Source of the DNA: Anaeramoeba ignava BMAN
Lineage: Eukaryota; Protista; Anaeramoebae
Length of the DNA stretch: 64,000 nt
Reading direction: 5' to 3'
Assembly (NCBI GenBank): GCA_028826165.1
Contig: JAPDFW010000071.1
Location: 186,001 to 250,000, forward strand
Both the position numbers and the translations under genes were made by a program. Positions 12,036 to 42,750 of this stretch are shown here, piece after piece. The notes beneath the pieces are model-generated. The model saw nothing but the letters and a program-made list of their open reading frames with translations. It had not been told where the DNA came from and did not search any database. The first letter of the stretch is position 1. Every line of letters starts with the position of its first letter.

Positions 12036-15000
12036 TTAAAAGTGTGTTGTGATGACAGGAACTGAAGGAACAGTGCAAACACCACACATATTATTTGCTT
12101 GAGCCATTTTGCAATATCCTTTATCACCCCATAATTCACTCCAAGAATTTTTAATAATCCAAAATGGAGTTCCATCTTCTTCGCCCCAACCAACAAGCAA
12201 AACACCATGATCAAGTCCATCAAAATCACTGTGACAATCTTTACTTGAATAAATTCCACTTTGATAATAAACAAAGTCAAAATGTCCAGCATCAATTGCA
12301 ATAGCAAGTGGTCCATTTGCATATAACATTTCTTTTGTTAATTCAATATCTCCTGAAACTGAAACATTAAGATAGTGTGAAACTCCAATTTTTTGCATTG
12401 ATTTATCATATCCACAATAACTATCCATACAAAGATATGGATATAATTCTTCAGTTGTTAATCCATTTTGAGTCATCCAATCATAAGCTCCATACATCTT
12501 TTAAATTTTTATTATTATTTAAATTTAATTTTTAATTTTTGAATTTAATTTTTGAATTTAAAAAATTACCATTCCTCCTTCACATGCAGAATTACCTTCT
12601 GCCCAACTACATGCCATTAAAGCTTGTTCTGAAAATGTTTCCATTTTTCCTGTTGCTAAGAAATAAGCACCTATTTTTTTTTCCAAAAATTAAAAAAATT
12701 TGAATTAAAAATTTAGAAAATAAAATTGAGTTTTTTTTTACCTTCTGTTGCTCCTGTTGTTGCAAAAGACCAACAAGAACCACAAACACCTTGATCTTTA
12801 ACTAAAGAAACTGCACCATAATCCAACCAACTAAATGAATCAGGTAAATCTAAGTTTTGTCTTTGATAAGGAACAGCATTCTTAAGTTGAACATTAATTT
12901 CTGAATACTTTTTAGGAAGCATTAAAGATTTAAATTCTTCTAAAGTTAAATCTGCAAAATGATTTGGAGCCACTAAAATAAAATAAATTAAATTAAATTT
13001 TAAATTCAATAAATAATTAAATTTAAAAGAAAAATAACAAACATTTAAAAGAACGTTGAGAATTTAATTCATCAATTCTACGTAAATTTTCTTCATAGAT
13101 TAGTTTTCTTTTCTCATATTCGTTTCCTGTGTAATCTTTATTATATTCATTAACATAAGAATTAAATGAACGTGAATTTCTTAAACCTGAAACAAGAGCA
13201 CGAAGAGGAACAGGTGCAACTTTATCAGAATAAACAGTTTCAGTAGAATTACAAATAGGAGGAATATCATAACAGTTGGCATCATTAACATTTGGCTAAA
13301 AAATTATAAATAAAATTATAAATTAAATTATAAATTAAATTATAAATTAAATTATAAATAAAATTATAAATTAAATTATAAATTAAATATAAATTAAAAT
13401 ATAAAAAAAATTATAAATTAAATTATAAATAAAATTATAAAAAAAATTATAAATAAAATTATAAATTAAATTATAAATTAAATTATAAATAAAATTATAA
13501 AATTTAAAAATAAAATAAATAAAAATTATAAATTAAATTATAAATAAAATTATAAATAAAATTATAAATAAAATTATAAATAAAATTATAAATAAAATTA
13601 TAAATAAAATTATAAATTAAATTATAAATAAAATTATAAATAAAATTATAAATAAAATTATAAATTAAATTATAAATTAAATTATAAATAAAATTATAAA
13701 TAAAATATAAATAAAATTATAAATTAAATTATAAATTAAATTATAAATTAAAATTATAAATTAAAATTATAAATTAAAATATAAATAAAATTATAAATAA
13801 AATTATAAATTAAAATTATAAATTAAATTATAAATTAAATTATAAATAAAATTATAAATTAAAATTATAAATAAAATTATAAATAAAATTATAAATTAAA
13901 ATAAAATTATAAATAAAATTATAAATAAAATTATAAATTAAAATTATAAATAAAATTATAAATAAAATTATAAATTAAATTATAAATTAAATTATAAATA
14001 AAATTATAAATTAAATTATAAATAAATTAAATTATAAATAAAATTATAAATAAAATTATAAATTAAATTATAAATTAAATTATAAATAAAATTATAAATT
14101 AAATTATAAATAAATTAAATTATAAATAAAATTATAAATAAAATTATAAATAAATTAAAATTATAAAAAAAAAATAAATAAAATTATAAATTAAATTATA
14201 AATTAAAATTATAAATAAAAATTATAAATAAAATTATAAAATAAAATTATAAATAAAATTATAAATAAAATTATAAATAAAATTATAAATAAAATTATAA
14301 ATAAAATTATAAATAAAATAATAAATAAAAAAAAAATTATAAAATAAAATTATAAAATTAAATTATAAAATTAAATTATAAATAAAATTATAAATAAAAT
14401 TATAAATAAAATTATAAATTAAATTATAAATAAAATTATAAATAAAATTATAAATTAAATTATAAATTAAAATTATAAATTAAATTATAAATTAAATTAT
14501 AAATAAAATTATAAATAAAATTATAAATTAAATTATAAATAAAATTATAAATAAAATTATAAAATAAAAATTATAAATTAAAATAATAAAATAAAATTAT
14601 AAATAAAATTATAAATAAAAATTATAAATTAAATTATAAATAAAAATTATAAATAAAATTATAAATAAAATAATAAAAAAAAAATATAAATAAAATTATA
14701 AATAAAATTATAAATAAAAAAAAATAAAATTATAAATAAAATTATAAATAAAAATTATAAATAAAATTATAAATAAAATTATAAATAAAATTATAAAAAA
14801 TTAAATTATAAATAAAATTATAAATAAAATTATAAATAAAATTATAAATAAAATTATAAATAAATTATAAATAAAATTATAAATAAAAATATAAATAAAA
14901 TTATAAAAATAAAATTATAAATAAAATTATAAATAAAAATATAAATTAAATTATAAATTAAATTTATAAAAATAAAATTATAAAAAAATAAATTATAAAT

Positions 15001-17450
15001 AAAATTATAAATTAAATTATAAAATAAAATTATAAATAAAATTATAAATAAAATTATAAATAAAATTATAAATAAAATTATAAACAAAAATTATAAATAA
15101 AATTATAAAATAAAATTATAAATAAAATTTATAAATAAAATTATAAATAAAATTATAAATAAAATTATAAATAAAAATTATAAAATTAAAATTATAAATA
15201 AAAATTATAAATAAAATTATAAATAAAATTATAAATAAAATAAAAATTCTAAATTATAAATAAAAATTATAAATAAAATTATAAATAAAATTATAAATAA
15301 AATTATAAATAAAATATATAAATAAAATTATAAATAAAATTATAAATTAAAATTATAAATAAAAATTATAAATAAAATTATAAATAAAATTATAAATTAA
15401 AATTATAAATAAAAATTAAAATTATAAATTAAAATAATAAATAAAATTATAAATTAAAATTATAAATTAAATTATAAATAAAATTATAAATAAAATTATA
15501 AATAAAATTATAAATAAAATAAAATTTATAAATAAAATTATAAATAAAATTATAAATAAAATTATATAAATTAAAATTATAAATAAAATTATAAATTAAA
15601 TTATAAATTAAAATTATAAATTAAATTATAAATAAAATTATAAATTAAATTATAAATAAAATTATAAATTAAATTATAAATAAAATTATAAATAAAATTA
15701 TAAAATAAAATTATAAAAATTAAATTATAAATAAAAATTATAAATTAAAAATATAAATAAAATTATAAATAAAATTATAAATAAAAATTATAAATAAAAT
15801 TATAAATAAAATTATAAATTAAAAATAAATAAAATTATAAATAAATAAAATTATAAATTAAAATTATAAATAAAATTATAAATTAAAATTATAAATAAAA
15901 TTATAAATTAAATTATAAATTAAATTATAAATTAAATTATAAATTAAAATTATAAATTAAATTATAAATAAAATTATAAATTAAATTATAAATAAAATTA
16001 TAAATAAAATTATAAATTAAATTATAAATTAAATTATAAATTAAAATTAAATATAAAATATAAAAAAAAAAATTATAAATTAAATTATAAATAAAATTAT
16101 AAAAATTATAAATAAAATTATAAATTAAATTATAAATTAAATTATAAATTAAAATTATAAATTAAATTATAAATAAAATTATAAATAAAATTATAAATAA
16201 AATTATAAATAAAATTATAAATTAAATTATAAATAAAATTATAAATAAAAATTATAAATAAAATTATAAATTAAATTATAAATAAAATTATAAATAAAAT
16301 TATAAATAAAATTATAAATAAAATTATAAAATAAAATTATAAATTAAATTATAAATAAAATTATAAATAAAATTATAAATAAAATTATAAATTAAAATTA
16401 TAAATTAAATTATAAAATAAAATTATAAATTAAAATTATAAATTAAATTATAAATAAAATTATAAATAAAAATATAAATTAAATTATAAATAAAAATTAT
16501 AAATTAAATTATAAATAAAATTATAAATTAAAATTATAAATAAATTATAAATTAAATTATAAATAAAATTATAAATTAAATTATAAATTAAATTATAAAT
16601 AAAATTATAAATAAAAATATAAATTAAATTATAAATAAAATTATAAATAAAATTATAAATAAAAATATAAATTAAATTATAAATTAAATTATAAATAAAA
16701 TTATAAATTAAAATTATAAATTAAATTATAAATTAAATTATAAATAAAATTATAAATTAAATTATAAATAAAATTACAAATAAAAATATAAATAAAATTA
16801 TAAATAAAATTACCTCATAAGAATAATAATCTAAAATATAAATGTCATAATGACTATGGAACACAATATTATAACCATGAAGTAAATATCTAACAGGATT
16901 TCCATCAGCATCAGTATAAAAAGTATAAGAATTTGACTTATTATATTCAGTAATATTCATTTGCCAATAATAACAATGAATTCCACGAACAACACTTTCA
17001 CCCATATAAACCCAAGCAGAATCAGTAAGATTAGGCAAAACATTTGGGAGATTTGAGTCAACAGCAGTAGATGACGGTCCTGCATTCTGAAATATTGTGC
17101 AACCTTGATGGTCTTGCTGAATTCGTAATTCGTACGTTTTGTTCAAATCATCCCGAATTATATCTGTTCCTAAAGCTGTTGTAATATTCATTGAATAGTA
17201 ATCAACTCGTTCATGATCTGAATCTCCATCAAAATTAACAAGAATTGGTTCTGTTACGTTTCCATTTGGTATTTGCCAAATTCCTGTAACTCGGTACTAT
17301 TTGAATTTAAAATATTATTTTAATTTAAAAAATTTTTATTATTTTTATTTTATTTTTAAAAACCTTTGTTGGATAAACTGGTGGATTAATTCCAAATGTT
17401 GTAGAAAATAAAAGACAAAAAGTAAATGTTAATGCAAAAATTTTCAACAT
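12036..17450 (-). CDS. Papain-family (C1A) cysteine protease with long N-terminal domain, 26/29-kDa proteinase / CfaD type; 6 exons (17450-17364, 17296-16814, 13295-13043, 12972-12742, 12670-12570, 12497-12036)
   Basis: Signal peptide [21 protein letters not shown]-terminal domain [10 protein letters not shown]...EPI...RVDYY and [11 protein letters not shown]29 prodomain (NHFADLT). Catalytic motifs [21 protein letters not shown] and IIKNSW. All introns are GT-AG. Confidence 0.9.
13300..16810. repeat. 12-bp AT satellite (ATTATAAATAAA / ATTATAAATTAA) filling the 3.5-kb intron 13296-16813 of the protease gene
   Basis: Five units per 60 nt; almost no G or C. Confidence 0.95.
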
Positions 17451-30713: not shown

Positions 30714-33700
30714 TCATTTCTTCCATTCTTGTTGAGGAAAATTCTTCAATAAATCTTGATAAAATTTAGATTGAATAAAACGAGGATAACTATCAGTTTT
30801 CATTAAAGAAAAAACAGCGCTTTGAGCATCAGAAAAAGCTTCAGGATTTGGAACTCTCCATGAAAGCCTTTCTTTGCAATCTCCAAGAATAAAAGAATTA
30901 ATGTTGATTTGGTTATCACTTCCTTCCTTAATAAATTTTTCATAAATATTATTTGCGGCTTCGACTAATTCATCCTCATCAATTTTTTTATATTCTTCGA
31001 TTGCTTTCCAAAACAACAAATTTTCTTCACTAAAATTTTCAACCAAGAAATCCATGAAAAATTTACAGTATTTTTCTTCATTAAGTAGTAAATCAAAAGG
31101 AATCAATTCCAAACTTTTTTGCTTCATTCTTTCCTTCTCATTGTCGCTTTTGGCCTGTTTGTCCTTATCGCTCTTTTGGCTTGGATAAATGCCTTGTAGG
31201 TTGTCTGGGAGTTTGGGTATTTCGATTGATTTGTCATCGAAATCCTTCTTTTGTTTTCTTTTCCAAAAAAAGCTGATACTTCGACCTTCTTTTTTTTTCT
31301 TTTTTTTTCTCTTCAGCGCGTCGGACAAACTCTCGCATTTCTCGCTCAAAGTTTTTGAAGACTGCATCTGTTCAGCAAGTGTCTGAGTAACTTGCTGGAT
31401 TTCTCTTTCCTTTGATTCAAATTGGGTGGCGACAAGCTGCAGGATCTCTTCAAGTTCGCTGATTGAATTGATTGTTCTTGCCTGTCCAAGAAAGTTTCTG
31501 ACAAAGTCGCTGAATTTTAAGATCACGTTCGCATTCTCCTCTTTCTGGTTTGCTGTGTCAGATTGTTTGATTAAGTGGGCTTTTTTGGACTGTTCAAGTT
31601 GTTGGAAAATATTTTCTCTTTTGATTTTGAGATCTTCAATCAATTGTTTTTCGTTCAGAATTTGTTCCTCAATTTGGGATGTTGTCTTGTTGCGCTCCAA
31701 ACGGTTCTGGGATTCTTTGGCTTGTAAATCAACAAGTTTTTTTTCTAATCCTGATATTTTTTTGACTGTTTCAAGTGTTTCGGGGTTGATTTTGCTTGTC
31801 ATTTTTTCTATGTCGACTCCATACTCTTCGAATTGTTTCTGTAGCTTTTGTTTCTCATTTCTGAGATTCTGTAGTTTCGATGAGACTGAGTCTATGTTCT
31901 CTGTTTGTGCTTGTGAAATTTGCGCTGCTTGCACAATATTTTTTTGCAGTTGATTTTTGATTTTTTCCAAATTTTCCATTTGATTTTGGATTTTTTGTTG
32001 GAAATTTTGCAAGGCTTTTGAATCTTCAATTTTGGATTCTTTTGTTAGATCCTTTTGCATTTGGGACAAGGGCTGTGTTTCGTTCAAGAGATTGTGCATG
32101 ATTTGGTTGTATTCCTGATCGAAGATGAGCGAGGTTTGTTTTTCTGTGTCAAACTGCAGAACCTGTTCCTCAACATCATCGAACTCAGAGTCGCTGAGAA
32201 AATCATCGATGTCATCGTCGATGCTCGAGAAGATTTCGTCCTTTGGGGGTGTGTCGTCTTGGCTGATCTTCGGCGCTTTGGCGCTGGTGTCTTGATTAAT
32301 TTGTGTTTTTTCTCGATTAAGCTTCGAAATTTGATCCGATTTCATTTTGATTGAATCGAGAAGAATGTTCTTTTTAACTTCCAATGCCTCTTGTGTTCTT
32401 TTTTCATTGTTCAGTTGCTGTGTGATGATGGAGACTTGCTTTTCAATCTCGCCGTTTTCTTTTTCCAATTCTGTTCGCACTTGTGAAATTTCACTGAGTT
32501 GGATAATTTTCTTTGACATTTCGCTTGTTTCCATTTTTAGCTCAATCACTTGTGCCATGTTATGCAATGTTTCCTCGTTTCTTTTTCTTCTTTCTTCGAA
32601 GAATTTCTGCTGAAGATTTTCAGACAATTTCCGGTAGTTTTCAACTTCCATTTTGTAATTCGCAAGACTTTTTGCCTCTTTTTCTTTATCTTGAATAACG
32701 CTCTCAACTTGTTTTGCCCGATCTTTCCAATATATAATTTCCGATTCTTCTTTTTTTCTGTTTAAGTTCTTTTGAAACTTTTCTTCATCAGGAATTTTTT
32801 CATCATTTGTTTTTGATGTTTTCATTTTTTCTTCAATAATTTCTTTTATTTTTTCTTCAAATTCAACTTGTGATTTTTTTTCGTCTTCAATTAATTTTTC
32901 ATATTCCAAAATTTTCTGCTCGAGTTTTTGGTTTTGTTCCTGAATTTTTTGGAGTTTTTCTTGATCGTTTACTTGTCTATAAATTTAAAATGAATAATTT
33001 TTCAATTTGGATTAATTCATTAATTTTTTTTTGAAAATTGAAAATTGAAAAATGAAAAATGAAAATTAACCCAAAATTCTCTTTTAATATTTGTTGAGTT
33101 TTTTGTTCTAATAATTGTGTTTCTTCAAGCAATCCATTTGATACTATTCTTAATTTCTTTACTTCTTCGTGTTGTTTTTTTAATTGATCATTTTTCTTTT
33201 CGTTTTCTTGAGTGAATTTTGCTCTCATTTTTTCACAAACACTTTTCCATCTTGATATTTCGTCTTTATATGTTTTGATTTGGTTTTCAGGGAATGGTTT
33301 ATCTTTTTCTATATTTTGGCTTGTCTTTTGATTTATATTTTAATTTTAATTTTAATTTTAAATTTTTAAATGAATTTTAATTTTAATTTTATTTGAATTT
33401 TATAAATGAATTTTAATTTTAATTTTAATTTTAATTTTAATTTTAATTTATAAATGAATTTTAATTTTAATTTTATAAATGAATTTTAATTTTAATTTTA
33501 ATTTTAATTTTATAAATGAATTTTAATTTTAATTTTATTTTTATAAATGAATTTTAATTTTAATTTAAATTTGAATTTGAATTTGAATTTTAATTTTAAT
33601 TTTAATTTTAATTTTAATTTTAATTTGAATTTGAATTTGAATTTTGAATTTTAATTTAATTTGAATTTTATAAATGAATTTTAATTTTGAATTTTATAAA

Positions 33701-35202: not shown

Positions 35203-36885
35203 ATGAAATTATTTTTCGCTTTTTTCTTTGTTTTATTTGTTTTTTATGTTTCAGCTGGTTATGTCAATTTAACTATGAATCAAAAATTAGATCATTTTAA
35301 TTATCTTGATGATAGAACATTCAAACAACATTATGTTGTTAATGCTGATTATTATCAACCTGGTGGTCCTGTTTTTTTAGATATAACTGGTGAAGCACCA
35401 CTAGAATATTTTATTAAAACTGTATTTTAATTTTAATTTTAATTTTAATTTTAATTTTAATTTTATTTTAATTTTATAAATGAATTTTAATTTTAATTTT
35501 GTAAATGAATTTTAATTTTGTAAATGAATTTTATTTTTATAAATGAATTTTAATTTTGTAAATGAATTTTAATTTATATTAAATTTTCTTAAATAAAAAG
35601 TATGGATTCCCAATAGAATTAGCATCAAAATATAATGCACTTTTTGTTTCACTTGAACATAGATATTATGGTACAAGTCATCCATTTCCAAACAATCCAA
35701 CAAATGAACAAATGACTTATTTATCATCACAACAACAACTGGCGGATCTCGCAGCATTCCACGATCTAATAATGGATCAATTTAATTTACCTGAAAATAC
35801 AACATGGATAGCATTTGGATGTTCATATGCAGGAATGTTATCAGCATGGTTCAGAATGAAATATCCACATATGATTGCAGGTTCATATAGTGGAAGTTCA
35901 CCTGTTCATGCCAAAATTGATTTCTTTGAATACAATCTTGTTTGCCAAGAAGCACTTGATCCATCTTGTTTAGCATCTTTAAATCAAGCTTTAACAGATG
36001 TTAAAACTTTGCTTCAAACACCAGATGGTCAACTTCAATTACAACAAATGTTCAATGTTTGCACTCCTTTTACCGATAATTTTCAAATTGTCAGTTTTGA
36101 GTATTCAATTGTGGATTATTTCCAAGGTGTAATTCAATATAATAATCCACCTAATTATCCTAAAGAAACAATGTGCCAGATCTTAACTTCAGCTCCTGAT
36201 CCACTTCAAGCTTATGCTGAATTAGTCGTTTCCGATAGTAATGGTAATTGCATTGATTTATCTTCAAACGGTTTGAAATCTGTTGCAAGTGGTGGTAATT
36301 CTTGGTGGTGGCAATGTTTAACTGAATTTGGATTCTATCAAACTTTTCTTGCTAATGAATCTTTTGGATTTCCTGATATTAATGTTGAATATTATCAAGA
36401 AATTAACAACATTGTTTTCGGAATTACAATGGATCCTGATGCTGATTTTATTAACCAATTTTTTGGTTCTACTGATCCAAAAGATGTTACTAATATTATT
36501 TTTACAAATTCGAAATATGATCCATGTAAGAAATAAATAATTTTTAATTTTTAATTTATTTTATCAACAACAAAATAATTAATTTTTAATCTTTTTTTAT
36601 CTTTAAATCTTTTAGGGTAAATTTCAATCTTTTAATTTTTATTTATTATTTTTTAAATTCAAATTTAAATTAATTTAATTAATTTAAAATAAAATAAAAA
36701 GGTCAAGTTTATCAGTTTTAAGAAATATTTCAGATACAGTTACTTCTTATGTTTATACATCTGCAGGTCATTGTGCTCCATTTCATTTTTTTAATTCAGA
36801 AATGCAACAAGATGTTATTGATGCAAGAAATGCAATTGATGAATTTGTTCAAAATATTATTTCATCTTCAAAATCATCAAATTAA
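35203..36885 (+). CDS. Serine carboxypeptidase family S28 (PRCP/thymus-specific serine protease-like); exons 35203-35421, 35601-36525, 36616 (1 nt), 36702-36885
   Basis: Signal peptide, QKLDHF...TFKQHY, LEHRYYGTS, YLSSQQQLADLA, nucleophile GCSYAG, WWWQCLTEFG, IIFTNSKYDP(W) and catalytic His in AGHC. Confidence 0.9.
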
Positions 36886-36978: not shown

Positions 36979-38400
36979 TTATTTTTCAAAAGATTCACGA
37001 ATTTGATTTAAAATTAGAGTTGCTGTTGAAAGTGAGATTTCAGAAGGGTTTTTCTGATACAACAATTGTGTAACTTGTTCAATCTCCTGATTATTTTGAG
37101 CGCCAGCCATAATTGCAAGGTTACTTGCATGAAGTTTCATGTGACCTTTCTGGATGCCTTCAGTAACTAAAGCTCTCAAAGCAGCAAAATTTTGAGCCAA
37201 ACCAACAGCAGCAAAAACAGAAGCGAGTTCTTGTGAATTTTTGCAATCCAAAAGTTTAAGACAAGTTTGAGCAACAGGATTAACTTTGGTAGCTCCGCCA
37301 ACAACACCTATTGAAAGAGGAACAAAAAGTTCACCAACTAAATCACCGTTGTTATTTTGGTAGTATTTAGTTAAAGTATTTGTGCGGCTATTCAGTATCT
37401 CCTGTTTTTGCAGGTCTGTGAATAGAATATCATCAAGAATCATCTGTTCTAAACCGGAAAAACGGGGGATTTCCAAAGAATATTTGCGAAAGGAATGAAT
37501 AGCAGATTCAATTGAACGGAAATCATTTCCTGTCGCAATGCAGACTGAATCAATGCCGTTCATCATTCCTTTGAGATGAGTAGCTGCTCTGAAGGGATCA
37601 TTTTCTGCGAATTGCCATGCTTGTATGATTCTTTGCGCAATTTCATCGCCACTGTACTTGTTTTTGGAGCTTTCTTGAAGAACCTGTTTTGTCCAAACTG
37701 CTTTTGCAGTGAATGTGCGATGAATTGGAAGATTCGAGATGATTTTGAGAAGAACATTCCCTTGAACAAGTGTTTCTATTGTTGGCGCAATGAATTCCAT
37801 CATGCTATTGACTATATTTGCGCCCATTGCGTCTTTGACATCAATCATGAAATAAATGATAAGCATTTCTTTTCTTGTTTGTGATTTTTGGAAATCATCC
37901 GAAATTGTGAGTATTCTGCTTGTCATATATTTTGCTCCTCCGTTTCTTTCATACATTTTTGGAAACTTTGTGTTGATCATTAAACACAGTTTTTCTTGAT
38001 ATGAATCCACATTTTTTTTCGCTTCTTCTGCGCTTATTTTCATTTCTATTGCTTGGATTTGCCCAATAACAACATCAATTCCTGTCGAAGTTACAAAAAA
38101 TCCTCCTGAATTTCTTGCTAGTTTTGCTGCAAAGGATACTGCTGCTATCACGCTTGATTCTTCAGTTGCCATTGGGATTATATATTCTTTTTTGTTCACA
38201 ATAAAGTTTGTTGCTATTCCTAATGGAATTGGGAATATTCCAATCATATTCTCGATCATTTTGTCGAATATTTCTGTTTTGTTTTTTGTGTTTGAAATTG
38301 TTTCTATATCGTTTTTGTCCAGAGTGGAGTTTTCAAGTAAAATTTCTTGTCTTTTTTGTAAGGGATTTTTGTAGAATGCTGGTAATTGTGAGGTTTTCAT
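36979..38400 (-). CDS. mvaA: Class II (prokaryote-type) HMG-CoA reductase, intronless
   Basis: ENMIG, PMATEESSVIAA, DAMGAN, DPFRAATHLKGMMNGID, GNDFR and GLAQNFAALRALVTEGIQKGHMKLHA. No N-terminal membrane domain. Confidence 0.92.
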   Translation of the reverse strand: MKTSQLPAFYKNPLQKRQEILLENSTLDKNDIETISNTKNKTEIFDKMIENMIGIFPIPLGIATNFIVNKKEYIIPMATEESSVIAAVSFAAKLARNSGGFFVTSTGIDVVIGQIQAIEMKISAEEAKKNVDSYQEKLCLMINTKFPKMYERNGGAKYMTSRILTISDDFQKSQTRKEMLIIYFMIDVKDAMGANIVNSMMEFIAPTIETLVQGNVLLKIISNLPIHRTFTAKAVWTKQVLQESSKNKYSGDEIAQRIIQAWQFAENDPFRAATHLKGMMNGIDSVCIATGNDFRSIESAIHSFRKYSLEIPRFSGLEQMILDDILFTDLQKQEILNSRTNTLTKYYQNNNGDLVGELFVPLSIGVVGGATKVNPVAQTCLKLLDCKNSQELASVFAAVGLAQNFAALRALVTEGIQKGHMKLHASNLAIMAGAQNNQEIEQVTQLLYQKNPSEISLSTATLILNQIRESFEK

Positions 38401-38755: not shown

Positions 38756-38866
38756 TGAAAAAAAAAATTTTTTTAATTTCATTTTTTTCCTTTTCATTCT
38801 TTTTTTGATTTGAAAAAAAAAATTTTTTTAATTTCATTTTTTTCCTTTTCATTCTTTTTTTCTAAA

Positions 38867-41800
38867 ATGTCAGATAGTGATTTGGAATTAGAAACATTTG
38901 AAACAATTCAATTAAACGATCCAGACGAAGAACCACCATTACCATGGAATTACGAAGAATATCGGAGTCCATTTACATCACACATTCATTATTCATGCGG
39001 ACATCAAGTACTAATTGAGCAATTAGACGATGAGCAATTAATATCAAAAAAATGTCCTATTTGCCAGAACGATCAATCACCACTTTCGGTTATCCAAAAA
39101 AAACACTTAAAATGCCCTCAACTTTACTCAGAAAACATCTCAGGAAAAATAAAAGAAATGGGAGAAGATCCAACAATTCGGAACAGAAAATCAGGCGTTC
39201 ATGAATACTATCTGAACCAGCAAAGATTACTGCAGAAATACGGAAGCGATCTGCAAAATGTTCCCGTAAAAAGAAACTATATTACAAAACATGATCCTGC
39301 GAATTTTATGCCCCAAATAGATTCGCAAATAGAAAATTCAACAATTTCGCAAGTTGTCCAAGAAACCGAACTTACAGACCCAACAGAACCAACAGAAAAG
39401 AGCCAAGAAGTTCTTCTCAAAATGAAGGAGCAACGTCGGAAAACGATCCAAACAAAAGCCAAAGAAAAAGAGCAAAAAATAACGGACTTGCAACTTTGGA
39501 TTTCTTTTATTACGAATTTTGTCCTTGTTATTCTCAAATCAATTGCTGTTTCTGTTTCTTCTTCTGCAACGGTTGTTGCCTCGCTAATGGATTCTATTCT
39601 TGATATCCTTTCTTGTTTCACAGTCATTTTCACTGAAAGATTTTCGCGCAAGAAGTCTTTTAATGATCTTTATCGATATCCAGTTGGCAAATCAAGAATG
39701 GAACCCATTTTAATTCTCGTTTTTAGTTCAGTTACTTCAACAATGGGAATCCAATTGTTTATTCAGTCCATCCAGCATTTGATTGGCAAGAAAACTAAAG
39801 TCGAGTTTGGTGTTTATCCTTTCGTTGTTTTGCTGTTTACTGTTGGTGTTAAATTGATTTTGTATATTTGGTGTCGTTTTTCAAAGAGATCTGTCATTCG
39901 TATTCTTTCTAAAGATCATCGAAATGATGTTTTTAGTAATTTGGTTGGTGTTATAATGGCTGAAATGGCCACAAAATATTATTGGAGGTAATTAATATTA
40001 AATTTTTAAATAAATTTTCAAATTTTGAAATAAAATTGATTATAAAATTGATTATAAAATTGATTATAAAATTGATTATAAAATTTATTATTAAATTGAT
40101 TATTAAATTTATTATAAAATTGATTATTAAATTGATTATTAAATTGATTATTAAATTTATTATTAAATTGATTATTAAATTGATTATTAAATTTATTATT
40201 AAATTGATTATTAAATTGATTATTAAATTGATTATAAAATTGATTATAAAATTAATTATAAAATTAATTATAAAATTAATTATTAAATTGATTATTAAAT
40301 TGATTATAAAATTATTTATAAAATTGATTATAAAATTTATTATTAAATTAATTAAAAAAGTGGAATAAAATTGATTATAAAATTGATTATAAAATTAATT
40401 ATAAAATTGATTATTAAATTGATTATTATTAAATTGATTTAAAATTGATTATTAAATTGATTATTAAATTGATTATAAAATTGATTATAAAATTGATTAT
40501 TAAATTAATTAAAAAATTAATTATTAAAATTAATTATAAAATTATTAAATTGATTATTAAATTAATTATAAAATTAATTATTAAATTAATTATAAAATTG
40601 ATTATAAAAAATTATAAAAAAATTGATTAAAATTAATTATAAAAATTAATTATAAAATTAATTATAAAATTAATTATAAAATTAATTATAAAATTAATTA
40701 TAAAATTGATTATAAAATTAATTATAAAATTAATTATAAAATTGATTATAAAATTGATTATAAAATTGATTATAAAATTAATTATAAAAAAATTATAAAA
40801 TTTATAAAATTAATTATAAAATTTATAAAATTGATTATAAAATTAATTATAAAATTAATTATAAAATTATTTATAAAATTAATTATAAAATTAATTATAA
40901 AATTATTTATAAAATTGATTATAAAATTAATTATAAAATTATTTATAAAATTATTTATAAAATTATTTATAAATTGATTTATTTATAAAATTTATTATAA
41001 AATTTATTATAAAATTGATTATAAAATTGATTATAAAATTAATTATTAAATTTATTATAAAATTGATTATAAAATTAATTATTAAATTTATTATAAAATT
41101 AATTATAAAATTAATTATTAAATTGATTATAAAATTGATTATAAAATTGATTATAAAAATTGTTTAATTATAAAATTAATTATAAAATTGATTATAAAAT
41201 TAATTATAAAAATAAAATATAAAATTAATTATTATAAAATTAATTATAAAAGTTAAATTGATTATAAAATTAATTATAAAATTGATTATAAAATTAATTA
41301 TAAAATTAATTATAAAATTAATTATAAAATTATAAAATTTATAAAATTAAATTAATTATAAAAATTGGAATAAATTTTTAAATAAAAAATAAAAATATAA
41401 AATTAATTTAATTATTAAAATTAATTATAAAATTAATTATAAAATTGATTATTAAATTGATTATAAAATTGATTATAAAATTGATTATAAAATTGATTAT
41501 AAAATTGATTATAAAATTGATTATAAAATTAATTATAAAATTGATTATAAAATTAATTATAAAATTAATTATAAAATTGATTATAAAATTAATTATAAAA
41601 TTGATTATAAAATTAATTATAAAATTGATTATTAAAAATTAATTATAAAATTAATTAAAAATTGATTATAAAATTAAATTGATTATAAAATTAATTATAA
41701 AATTGATTATAAAATTAATTATAAAATTGATTATAAAATTAATTATAAATTAATTATAAAATTAATTATAAAATTGATTATAAAATTAATTATAAAATTA

Positions 41801-42750
41801 TTTATAAAATTAATTATAAAATTAATTATAAAATTAATTATAAAATTGATTATAAAATTGATTATAAAATTAATTATAAAATTATAAAAATTATAAAAAA
41901 AATTAAATGGATTAAAAATTGGAATAAAATTGATTATAAAATTAATTATAAAATTAAAATTATTAATTATAAAATTTATAAAATTAATTATAAAATTAAT
42001 TATAAAATTAATTATAAAATTAATTATAAAATTAATTATAAAATTTATAAAAAAAATTTAATTATAAAAATTATAAAATTAATTATAAAATTGATTATTA
42101 AATTGATTATTAAATTGATTATTAAATTAATTATAAAATTTATTATTAAATTTATTATTAAATTAATTATAAAATTGATTATAAATTGATTATTAAATTG
42201 ATTATTAAATTGATTATAAAATTGATTATAAAATTGATTATAAAAATTAATTAAAAAAAGTGGAATAGATTTTTAAATAAATTAAATTTAAAATTAAACT
42301 AAAATTTAGAATGGATTTTATTGGAGAAATGACTATTGCTTTTATGATCCTTTTAACTTGGATTACTTTAATTTATAAAAACATTTTCAATTTAATTGGA
42401 GTAAGTGCACCTCCAGAACTCTTCAATAGATTAACATTTCTTGCATTAAAACATCATCAAGCAATATTAGCAGTAGAAAGAGTTCAAACACTTAAATTTG
42501 GTTCAAAATATTTTGTTGAAATTGATATTGTTCTTCCTTATGATATGGTAATTTTATAATTTAAATTTATTATTTAAAACATTTTAAAATTTTTTTTTTT
42601 TTTTCTTTTTGGAAAAATTTTTTCTAGCTTTTAGAACAATGTCATAGAATCGGTGAATCTTTACAAGATAAAGTAGAAGAAATTCCTGAAGTTGAAAGAG
42701 CATTTGTTCATGTTGATTCTCAAATTGAACACAAACCAGAACATAATTAA
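38867..42750 (+). CDS. Cation diffusion facilitator, Mn-CDF (MTP8-11-like); exons 38867-39987, 42310-42547, 42628-42750
   Basis: TM2 ASLMDSILD (DxxxD), YRYPVGKSRMEP, TM5 DHRND, and C-terminal FVEIDIVLP...HRIGESLQDKVEEIPEVERAFVHVD...HKPEH. Introns are phase-compatible. Confidence 0.9.
40030..42260. repeat. 12-bp satellite (AAATTGATTATA / AAATTAATTATA) filling the 2.3-kb CDF intron 39988-42309
   Basis: Visible 12-nt period, which gives the spurious (KLII)n ORFs. Confidence 0.95.

What the first reader, a model, noticed from the sequence alone, without database searches (positions are those of the whole stretch)
36525..36702. Single-nucleotide exon: the conserved Trp codon of an S28 peptidase is split T|G|G across three exons
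Seen: exon 2 ends ...GAT CCA T|GTAAGA (donor 36526). The last exon begins AAAAG|G TCA AGT TTA (36702) and encodes the catalytic-His region AGHC. Direct splicing gives TGT CAA GTT TAT CAG TTT TAA, which is out of frame and loses the His. The intervening DNA has no G apart from the splice sites, except for TTTTAG-G-GTAAAT at 36610-36622: an acceptor, one G (36616) and a donor. Including that G gives introns of 90 and 85 nt, typical for this window, and TGG, restoring DPW. Established: xxFxNGxxDPW is the conserved catalytic-Asp motif of family S28. One-nucleotide internal exons are extremely rare (one is reported in Arabidopsis APC11). Inference: there is an obligatory 1-nt exon, implying pure intron-definition or sequential splicing. 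Skipping it would give an inactive enzyme, so it could act as a switch.
Basis: partly seen in the sequence, partly recalled or inferred. Interest (0 to 1): 0.9.

Follow-up and report, generated by a model that had tools for sequence, protein, structure and literature searches.

The report
One-base exon in an amoeba peptidase
In the anaerobic amoeba Anaeramoeba ignava, a peptidase gene very probably has an exon of a single base (G) that completes a conserved tryptophan codon; such exons are known from plants and fungi, the same layout turns up in this amoeba's only CPSF4 gene, the public annotation misses both, and no RNA could be checked.

Summary
The gene is an S28 peptidase of Anaeramoeba ignava. 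Between donor 36526 and acceptor 36701 the only internal splice signal is AG-G-GT at 36614-36618 (chance about 1e-5 to 1e-3). Including G36616 gives DPWSSLSV: 104 of 105 homologs have this Trp, and Asp-His spacing becomes 25, as in human PRCP. A second case supports the reading: the single CPSF4 gene has the same T|G|G layout, and its intronless A. flamelloides ortholog has exactly that Trp. The scan had also noted CPSF4 and many 3-nt exons on other DNA of this genome. Likely mechanism: constitutive, intron-defined, one-after-the-other splicing after a recent intron gain one base from an older intron. One-base exons are already published (plant APC11 and VPS55, Fusarium CYP621A), so this is a new member of a known kind. 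Nothing supports a switch. No reads were laid, so mRNA proof is missing; mature mRNA alone could not separate this from a one-base-shifted non-canonical splice.

The parts
35203..35421 (+). Exon 1 of the S28 peptidase gene (73 codons, hydrophobic N-terminus that looks like a signal peptide by eye)
   Evidence: Pfam PF05577 positions 1-42, E 1e-10
35422..35600 (+). Intron 1, 179 nt, GT-AG, phase 0; an intron lies at about the same place in the C34 and C63 paralogs and both A. flamelloides homologs
35601..36525 (+). Exon 2; holds catalytic Ser148 (35823-35825), catalytic Asp380 (36519-36521) and the T of the Trp382 codon (36525)
   Evidence: PF05577 E 1.5e-67; match to PRCP chain 3n2z_B, E 1e-25
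36526..36615 (+). Intron A, 90 nt, GTAAGA...TTTTAG, phase 1; same position as the single intron of the sister paralog on C34
36616..36616 (+). One-nucleotide exon (G), middle base of the Trp382 codon; inferred, not seen in RNA
36617..36701 (+). Intron B, 85 nt, GTAAAT...AAAAAG, phase 2; absent from the C34 and C63 paralogs and both A. flamelloides homologs; GGT occurs at both ends
36702..36885 (+). Last exon; third base of Trp382, catalytic His405 (36769-36771), stop codon
36714..36715 (+). Rival in-frame acceptor (third AG after the AT-rich tract) that yields the 437-aa NCBI model KAJ5073933.1

Best explanation
G36616 is a real, constitutively included one-base exon. Shown: the sequence layout and the protein's need for exactly one G there. 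Inferred: the two short AT-rich introns (90 and 85 nt) are each recognised across the intron and removed one after the other, since two spliceosomes cannot sit on both sides of one base; removing either intron first leaves an ordinary exon-intron border for the second step. The product is a 442-aa S28 proline-specific peptidase with Ser148-Asp380-His405 and Trp382, the equivalent of PRCP Trp432 in the proline pocket. Origin (inferred, weaker): intron A arose in the ancestor of this gene and its C34 sister; intron B was then gained one base downstream at G|GT, in a genome whose splicing tolerates very small exons.
For: Island far beyond chance. Trp in 104 of 105 homologs with the motif, the exception being the NCBI model of this gene; Asp-His spacing 24-29 in nearly all, 25 with the G, 20 in the NCBI model; PRCP Asp430-His455 and Trp432 (PMC2893456). 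Gap-free alignment to the nearest paralogs and 422.7 bits against 397.8 (NCBI) and 372.6 (skip) on a profile of other homologs. The sister paralog (tree support 100/98) has intron A alone, and its transcript-derived protein reads DPWSKLS. Second case: the only CPSF4 locus has T|GTGAGT..TTTTAG|G|GTAATT..AAATAG|G TCA with no other G in 594 nt; its intronless A. flamelloides ortholog reads CYFWSKY, as the one-base model predicts and the NCBI model (CYFCESKY) does not. Acceptor-NNN-donor islands number 679 genome-wide against 19 and 45 for one and two bases. Published precedents.
Against: No RNA read, intermediate or transcript-derived protein of this gene was found. The assembly is nanopore-based with Illumina polishing and has damaged stretches elsewhere. 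One-base islands are not enriched as a class genome-wide (19), and some lie in AT repeats with no visible gene. Of about 60 islands examined, only CPSF4 qualified, and it was found by looking for AG-G-GT, so it is one extra case, not a rate. Branch points were not identified.
Confidence: 0.85

Rival explanations
1. Assembly error: the true DNA has one more G at the 36701-36702 (or 36526) junction, so a single 176-nt intron splits T|GG exactly as in the C34 paralog, and the internal island is chance.
For: Nanopore assembly in which G runs are error-prone; sister paralog has one intron at this position; damaged assembly at the 5' end of the C34 gene; 176 nt is a normal intron size.
Against: Needs an error at this exact base plus a 1e-5 to 1e-3 island, and the same double coincidence in CPSF4. 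The rest of this gene is free of frameshifts. Two rounds of Pilon were applied.
Confidence: 0.04
2. The NCBI model is right: one intron 36526-36715 is removed in frame and the protein lacks Trp382 and four neighbours (DPF-LRN).
For: In frame, GT-AG, 190 nt, deposited as KAJ5073933.1.
Against: Loses a Trp kept in 104 of 104 other homologs, shortens Asp-His spacing to 20, scores 25 bits lower. It skips two upstream AGs; none of 38 sampled introns has another AG in its last 20 nt or ends in CAG (my filters lean that way). My own predictor, with no RNA input, gave the same boundaries here and in CPSF4, so the deposited models need not rest on reads; the CPSF4 one conflicts with its ortholog.
Confidence: 0.05
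3. One intron with a non-canonical end shifted by one base (GT...AA ending at 36700, or starting at 36527), or an added G in the RNA, gives the same DPW mRNA without using G36616.
For: Because the needed base is G and both intron ends carry a G next to the exon, the mature mRNA would be identical (sequence).
Against: Does not explain the island in either gene; the sister paralog uses ordinary GT-AG ends at this position; such ends are very rare in general (own knowledge).
Confidence: 0.04
4. The exon is real and its skipping is regulated, switching the enzyme off.
For: Skipping gives a 387-aa product without the catalytic His; retention of intron B gives an immediate stop after the Trp; the skipped span is a normal intron length.
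Against: No data on isoforms; the same layout sits in the single-copy housekeeping gene CPSF4; the APC11 and CYP621A exons are described as required for the normal protein.
Confidence: 0.06

Closest known systems
One-nucleotide exon of Fusarium CYP621A (PMC12940212)
   Same: AG-G-GT island supplying the middle base of a conserved codon; phase-1 to phase-2 mismatch without it; intronless homolog as ruler; missed by annotation.
   Different: Conserved across about 20 Fusarium orthologs and confirmed by SRA reads; here it is lineage-specific (absent from paralogs and from A. flamelloides) and unconfirmed in RNA.
One-nucleotide exons of plant APC11 and VPS55 (PMC4674806, PMC8831610)
   Same: Spliceosomal 1-nt internal exon, absent from reference annotation; intron definition with one-after-the-other removal was proposed for APC11.
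   Different: Old and conserved across land plants, validated by RT-PCR; the APC11 base is an A. Here the host is a metamonad with very AT-rich introns and hundreds of 3-nt exon-like islands.
Placozoan cox1 single-base exon (PMC5436844, title only)
   Same: One coding base between two introns.
   Different: Mitochondrial; not spliceosomal (own knowledge).
Recursive splice sites (AG|GT, zero-length exons)
   Same: Stepwise removal through an internal acceptor-donor pair.
   Different: A base is kept in the mRNA; introns here are under 100 nt rather than very long (own knowledge).
Peptidase family S28 (PRCP, DPP7, PRSS16-like)
   Same: Pfam PF05577 over cut-off; Ser, Asp, His motifs; Trp two after the Asp; Asp-His spacing 25.
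   Different: His is followed by Cys (HC, as in the PRSS16-like homologs), not the second His of PRCP; substrate and activity untested.

Membership tests
Spliceosomal one-nucleotide internal exon | One base flanked by AG and GT, with introns of spliceable size on both sides | tested here: met
   TTTTAG-G-GTAAAT; 90 and 85 nt against a minimum of 64 and lower quartile of 86 in sampled introns
Spliceosomal one-nucleotide internal exon | Flanking exons are phase-incompatible and the base restores the conserved protein | tested here: met
   Phase 1 to phase 2; DPW and Asp-His spacing 25 restored. An in-frame but worse alternative exists at 36715.
Spliceosomal one-nucleotide internal exon | The base is present in mature mRNA | not tested
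Spliceosomal one-nucleotide internal exon | Both internal splice sites are used (intermediates, or a substituted base is carried into mRNA) | not testable with these tools
   Needs raw RNA reads or a minigene
Spliceosomal one-nucleotide internal exon | Genomic sequence confirmed by independent DNA reads | not tested
Spliceosomal one-nucleotide internal exon | Conserved in orthologs (true of the published cases) | tested here: not met
   No intron at this codon in two A. flamelloides homologs or the C63 paralog; one intron only in C34. Not a defining feature, but this line of support is absent.
Peptidase family S28 | Pfam PF05577 above the curated cut-off | tested here: met
   228.7 bits for exon 2 and 41.2 for exon 1, cut-off 25; PRCP and DPP2 structures matched
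Peptidase family S28 | Ser-Asp-His triad with Trp two residues after the Asp | tested here: met
   Ser148, Asp380, Trp382, His405 in the four-exon model; PRCP Ser179, Asp430, Trp432, His455
Peptidase family S28 | Proline-specific peptidase activity | not testable with these tools
   Needs an enzyme assay
Regulated (alternative) microexon | Condition-dependent inclusion | not testable with these tools
   No RNA data reached

The most novel reading that the evidence does not exclude
Anaeramoeba ignava splices with practically no lower limit on exon size, so that newly gained introns can land one base from an existing intron and be fixed. It then carries several young, independent, constitutive one-base exons (this S28 gene, the single CPSF4 gene, perhaps more) beside hundreds of three-base exons, all missed by annotation: a natural system for watching sequential intron-defined splicing and intron gain.
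Probability: 0.6. Interest if true: 0.72.

Novelty: new member of a known kind. Interest (0 to 1): 0.55.

Why it matters
Only a few spliceosomal one-base exons are published, all old and conserved, in plants and one fungal genus. A young one in a metamonad, with a sister paralog that keeps the one-intron state and relatives with no intron, shows a path by which such exons arise, and a second one in the only CPSF4 gene implies the organism splices them reliably. It also corrects two deposited proteins (KAJ5073933.1, KAJ5076198.1) at functionally important residues. It does not reveal a new kind of mechanism.

Tried and rejected
Spliced models were searched exon by exon by reference; joined models were built only inside scripts and never sent to a search tool, so an exact look-up of the joined proteins was left out. 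A search for short C-terminal fragments found nothing; an exact look-up of the exon-2 ORF found no Logan contig. A nearest-splice-site phase test on about 60 islands was mostly uninformative: most are ordinary exon ends or starts. Intron B is not a recognisable copy of intron A, of intron 1 or of the C34 intron (z at most 1.5), so tandem intron duplication is not supported here. A 4-nt exon hidden by a G-run error was rejected because the alignment to paralogs has no extra residue. No paper on Anaeramoeba micro-exons was found.

Full report
Observation. The described layout is in the sequence at the stated coordinates. Exon 2 ends GAT CCA T at 36525 before GTAAGA; the last exon starts G TCA AGT at 36702 after AAAAAG. 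In the 176 nt between, G occurs only at 36526, 36530, 36615-36617 and 36701, and the only internal acceptor-donor pair is TTTTAG-G-GTAAAT. Joining 36525 to 36702 gives DPCQVYQF-stop at 387 aa; adding G36616 gives 442 aa with DPWSSLSV and the AGHC motif. The island is not chance: 2 in 200,000 shuffles of the interior, 1e-5 (AGGGT) to 1e-3 (AG-N-GT) under a model of 37 other introns, and 1e-4 to 1e-3 from the 91 such islands in the 42.8-Mb genome. Introns of 90 and 85 nt fall in the short mode of 38 introns extracted from this genome (64 nt minimum, 86 nt lower quartile).

Identity. The exons match Pfam Peptidase_S28 and human PRCP and DPP2 structures. The top database hit is this gene as annotated in Anaeramoeba ignava, KAJ5073933.1, 437 aa. 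So the reading frame alone does not force a one-base exon. Homology does: 104 of 105 homologs with the motif have DPW, the only exception being this model; Asp-to-His spacing is 24-29 in nearly all, 25 with the G and 20 in the deposited model. In PRCP the triad is Ser179, Asp430, His455 (spacing 25) and Trp432 forms the proline pocket (PMC2893456). The four-exon model aligns without gaps to the nearest paralogs and scores 422.7 bits against 397.8 and 372.6 for the deposited and skipped forms. The 36715 acceptor is the third AG after the AT-rich tract; none of my 38 introns has another AG in its last 20 nt, though my filters favour that result. A simple predictor of mine with no RNA input chose the same boundaries as the deposited model, so that model need not rest on reads.

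Paralogs. The genome holds S28 genes on C34, C44, C55, C63, C64 and this contig. The C34 gene is the sister of this one (100/98) and has one intron at the same T|GG position; its transcript-derived EukProt protein reads DPWSKLS, so that intron is spliced. The C63 gene and two A. flamelloides homologs have no intron in this codon. The simplest history is gain of intron A before the split from C34 and gain of intron B afterwards; loss of B in C34 is possible too. Intron B is not a recognisable copy of its neighbours. It has GGT at both ends, as a short target duplication at G|GT would leave; this is an inference from three bases. Recent intron gain in A. ignava is proposed in PMC10710043.

A second case. 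A genome pattern search for AG-G-GT in G-free surroundings led to CPSF4/YTH1 at G000:C63, where the layout repeats: TTC T, donor GTGAGT, 94 nt, G, 499 nt, G TCA AAA, with no other G in 594 nt. With the base the zinc finger reads C-YFWSKYGE-C. The deposited model KAJ5076198.1 uses a donor 4 nt downstream and gives nine residues between the cysteines, alone among 124 homologs. The A. flamelloides ortholog is intronless and reads CYFWSKY, the residue the one-base exon predicts. This is the only CPSF4 locus found in the assembly. I found it before seeing that the scan had noted the same base (s1-692302). An assembly error would now need two double coincidences. It is one additional case out of about 60 islands examined, not a frequency.

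Genomic setting. Acceptor-donor islands between pure A/T flanks number 34, 19, 45 and 679 for spacers of 0, 1, 2 and 3 bases. The excess at three agrees with earlier notes of this scan on single-codon exons and suggests a spliceosome at ease with minimal exons; one-base islands are rare and not enriched as a class.

Mechanism. Shown: layout, need for one G, paralog states. Inferred: each short intron is defined across itself and the two are removed in turn, as proposed for APC11 (PMC4674806). If A goes first, the donor becomes CCATG|GTAAAT on a long exon; if B goes first, the acceptor becomes TTTTAG|GGTCAA, the state of the C34 paralog. Order and branch points are unknown. Skipping gives a truncated, His-less protein, but nothing indicates that this is regulated, and the same layout in CPSF4 argues for constitutive inclusion.

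Rivals. A missing G in the assembly (nanopore with Racon, Nanopolish and two Pilon rounds) about 0.04; the deposited acceptor as the main form 0.05; a one-base-shifted non-canonical splice 0.04.

Limits. One run holds the gene, of unknown kind and not on record as RNA. Neither the DNA nor the RNA of the junction has therefore been checked against reads.

Comparison and verdict. One-base spliceosomal exons are published for plant APC11 and VPS55 (PMC4674806, PMC8831610) and Fusarium CYP621A, which has the same AGGGT and the same split-codon logic (PMC12940212). I found no paper on micro-exons in Anaeramoeba. This is very probably (0.85) a new member of that rare known kind; what is new is the lineage, its apparent youth with a one-intron sister gene, and its recurrence in one genome. 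Interest 0.55.

Noticed in passing
L075:1204-2267 (G000:C63:5458-6521; base at C63:5772): CPSF4/YTH1 gene with a second probable one-base G exon splitting a Trp codon; intronless A. flamelloides ortholog has that Trp; NCBI model KAJ5076198.1 differs.
   Followed up: yes
window 36979-38400 (-): Intronless 473-aa HMG-CoA reductase ORF (PF00368, E 6e-98), converging on the S28 gene with stop codons under 100 nt apart; looks bacterial in type from memory, not tested.
   Followed up: partly
window 38810-39991 (+): Cation efflux family ORF (PF01545, E 2e-22) with a long N-terminal extension holding a Cys/His cluster.
   Followed up: partly
L019 (G000:C34, about 32700-33500, - strand): The 5' part of the C34 S28 paralog is duplicated and frameshifted in the assembly compared with its transcript-derived protein P0271 (461 aa); the NCBI model is cut to 368 aa. 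Points to local assembly damage.
   Followed up: partly
G000:C21:54712-57833: Twelve near-identical acceptor-donor sites with no base between (TTAG|GTAAAA), many about 160 nt apart: tandem intron-like units with zero-length spacers, or a satellite.
   Followed up: no
G000:C19, C31, C41, C146; C25, C79, C114, C117: Recurring two-base islands (TTAG-AA-GTAATA in seven places; ATAG-GA-GTAA in contexts like those of 3-nt exons): possible 2-nt exons, frameshifted copies or G-run assembly errors.
   Followed up: no
L017:4470-5080 (G000:C55): The C55 S28 paralog has small exons of about 21 and 18 nt, one carrying its DPW motif.
   Followed up: partly
L059:1518, L078:1518, L023 (- strand) 1517: Isolated AG-G-GT islands inside long AT-rich tracts with no flanking exon visible in the 3 kb held; unresolved.
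   Followed up: partly
window 14001-16000 and 40001-42000: Two 2-kb stretches almost free of G and C (GC 0.001 and 0.039).
   Followed up: no
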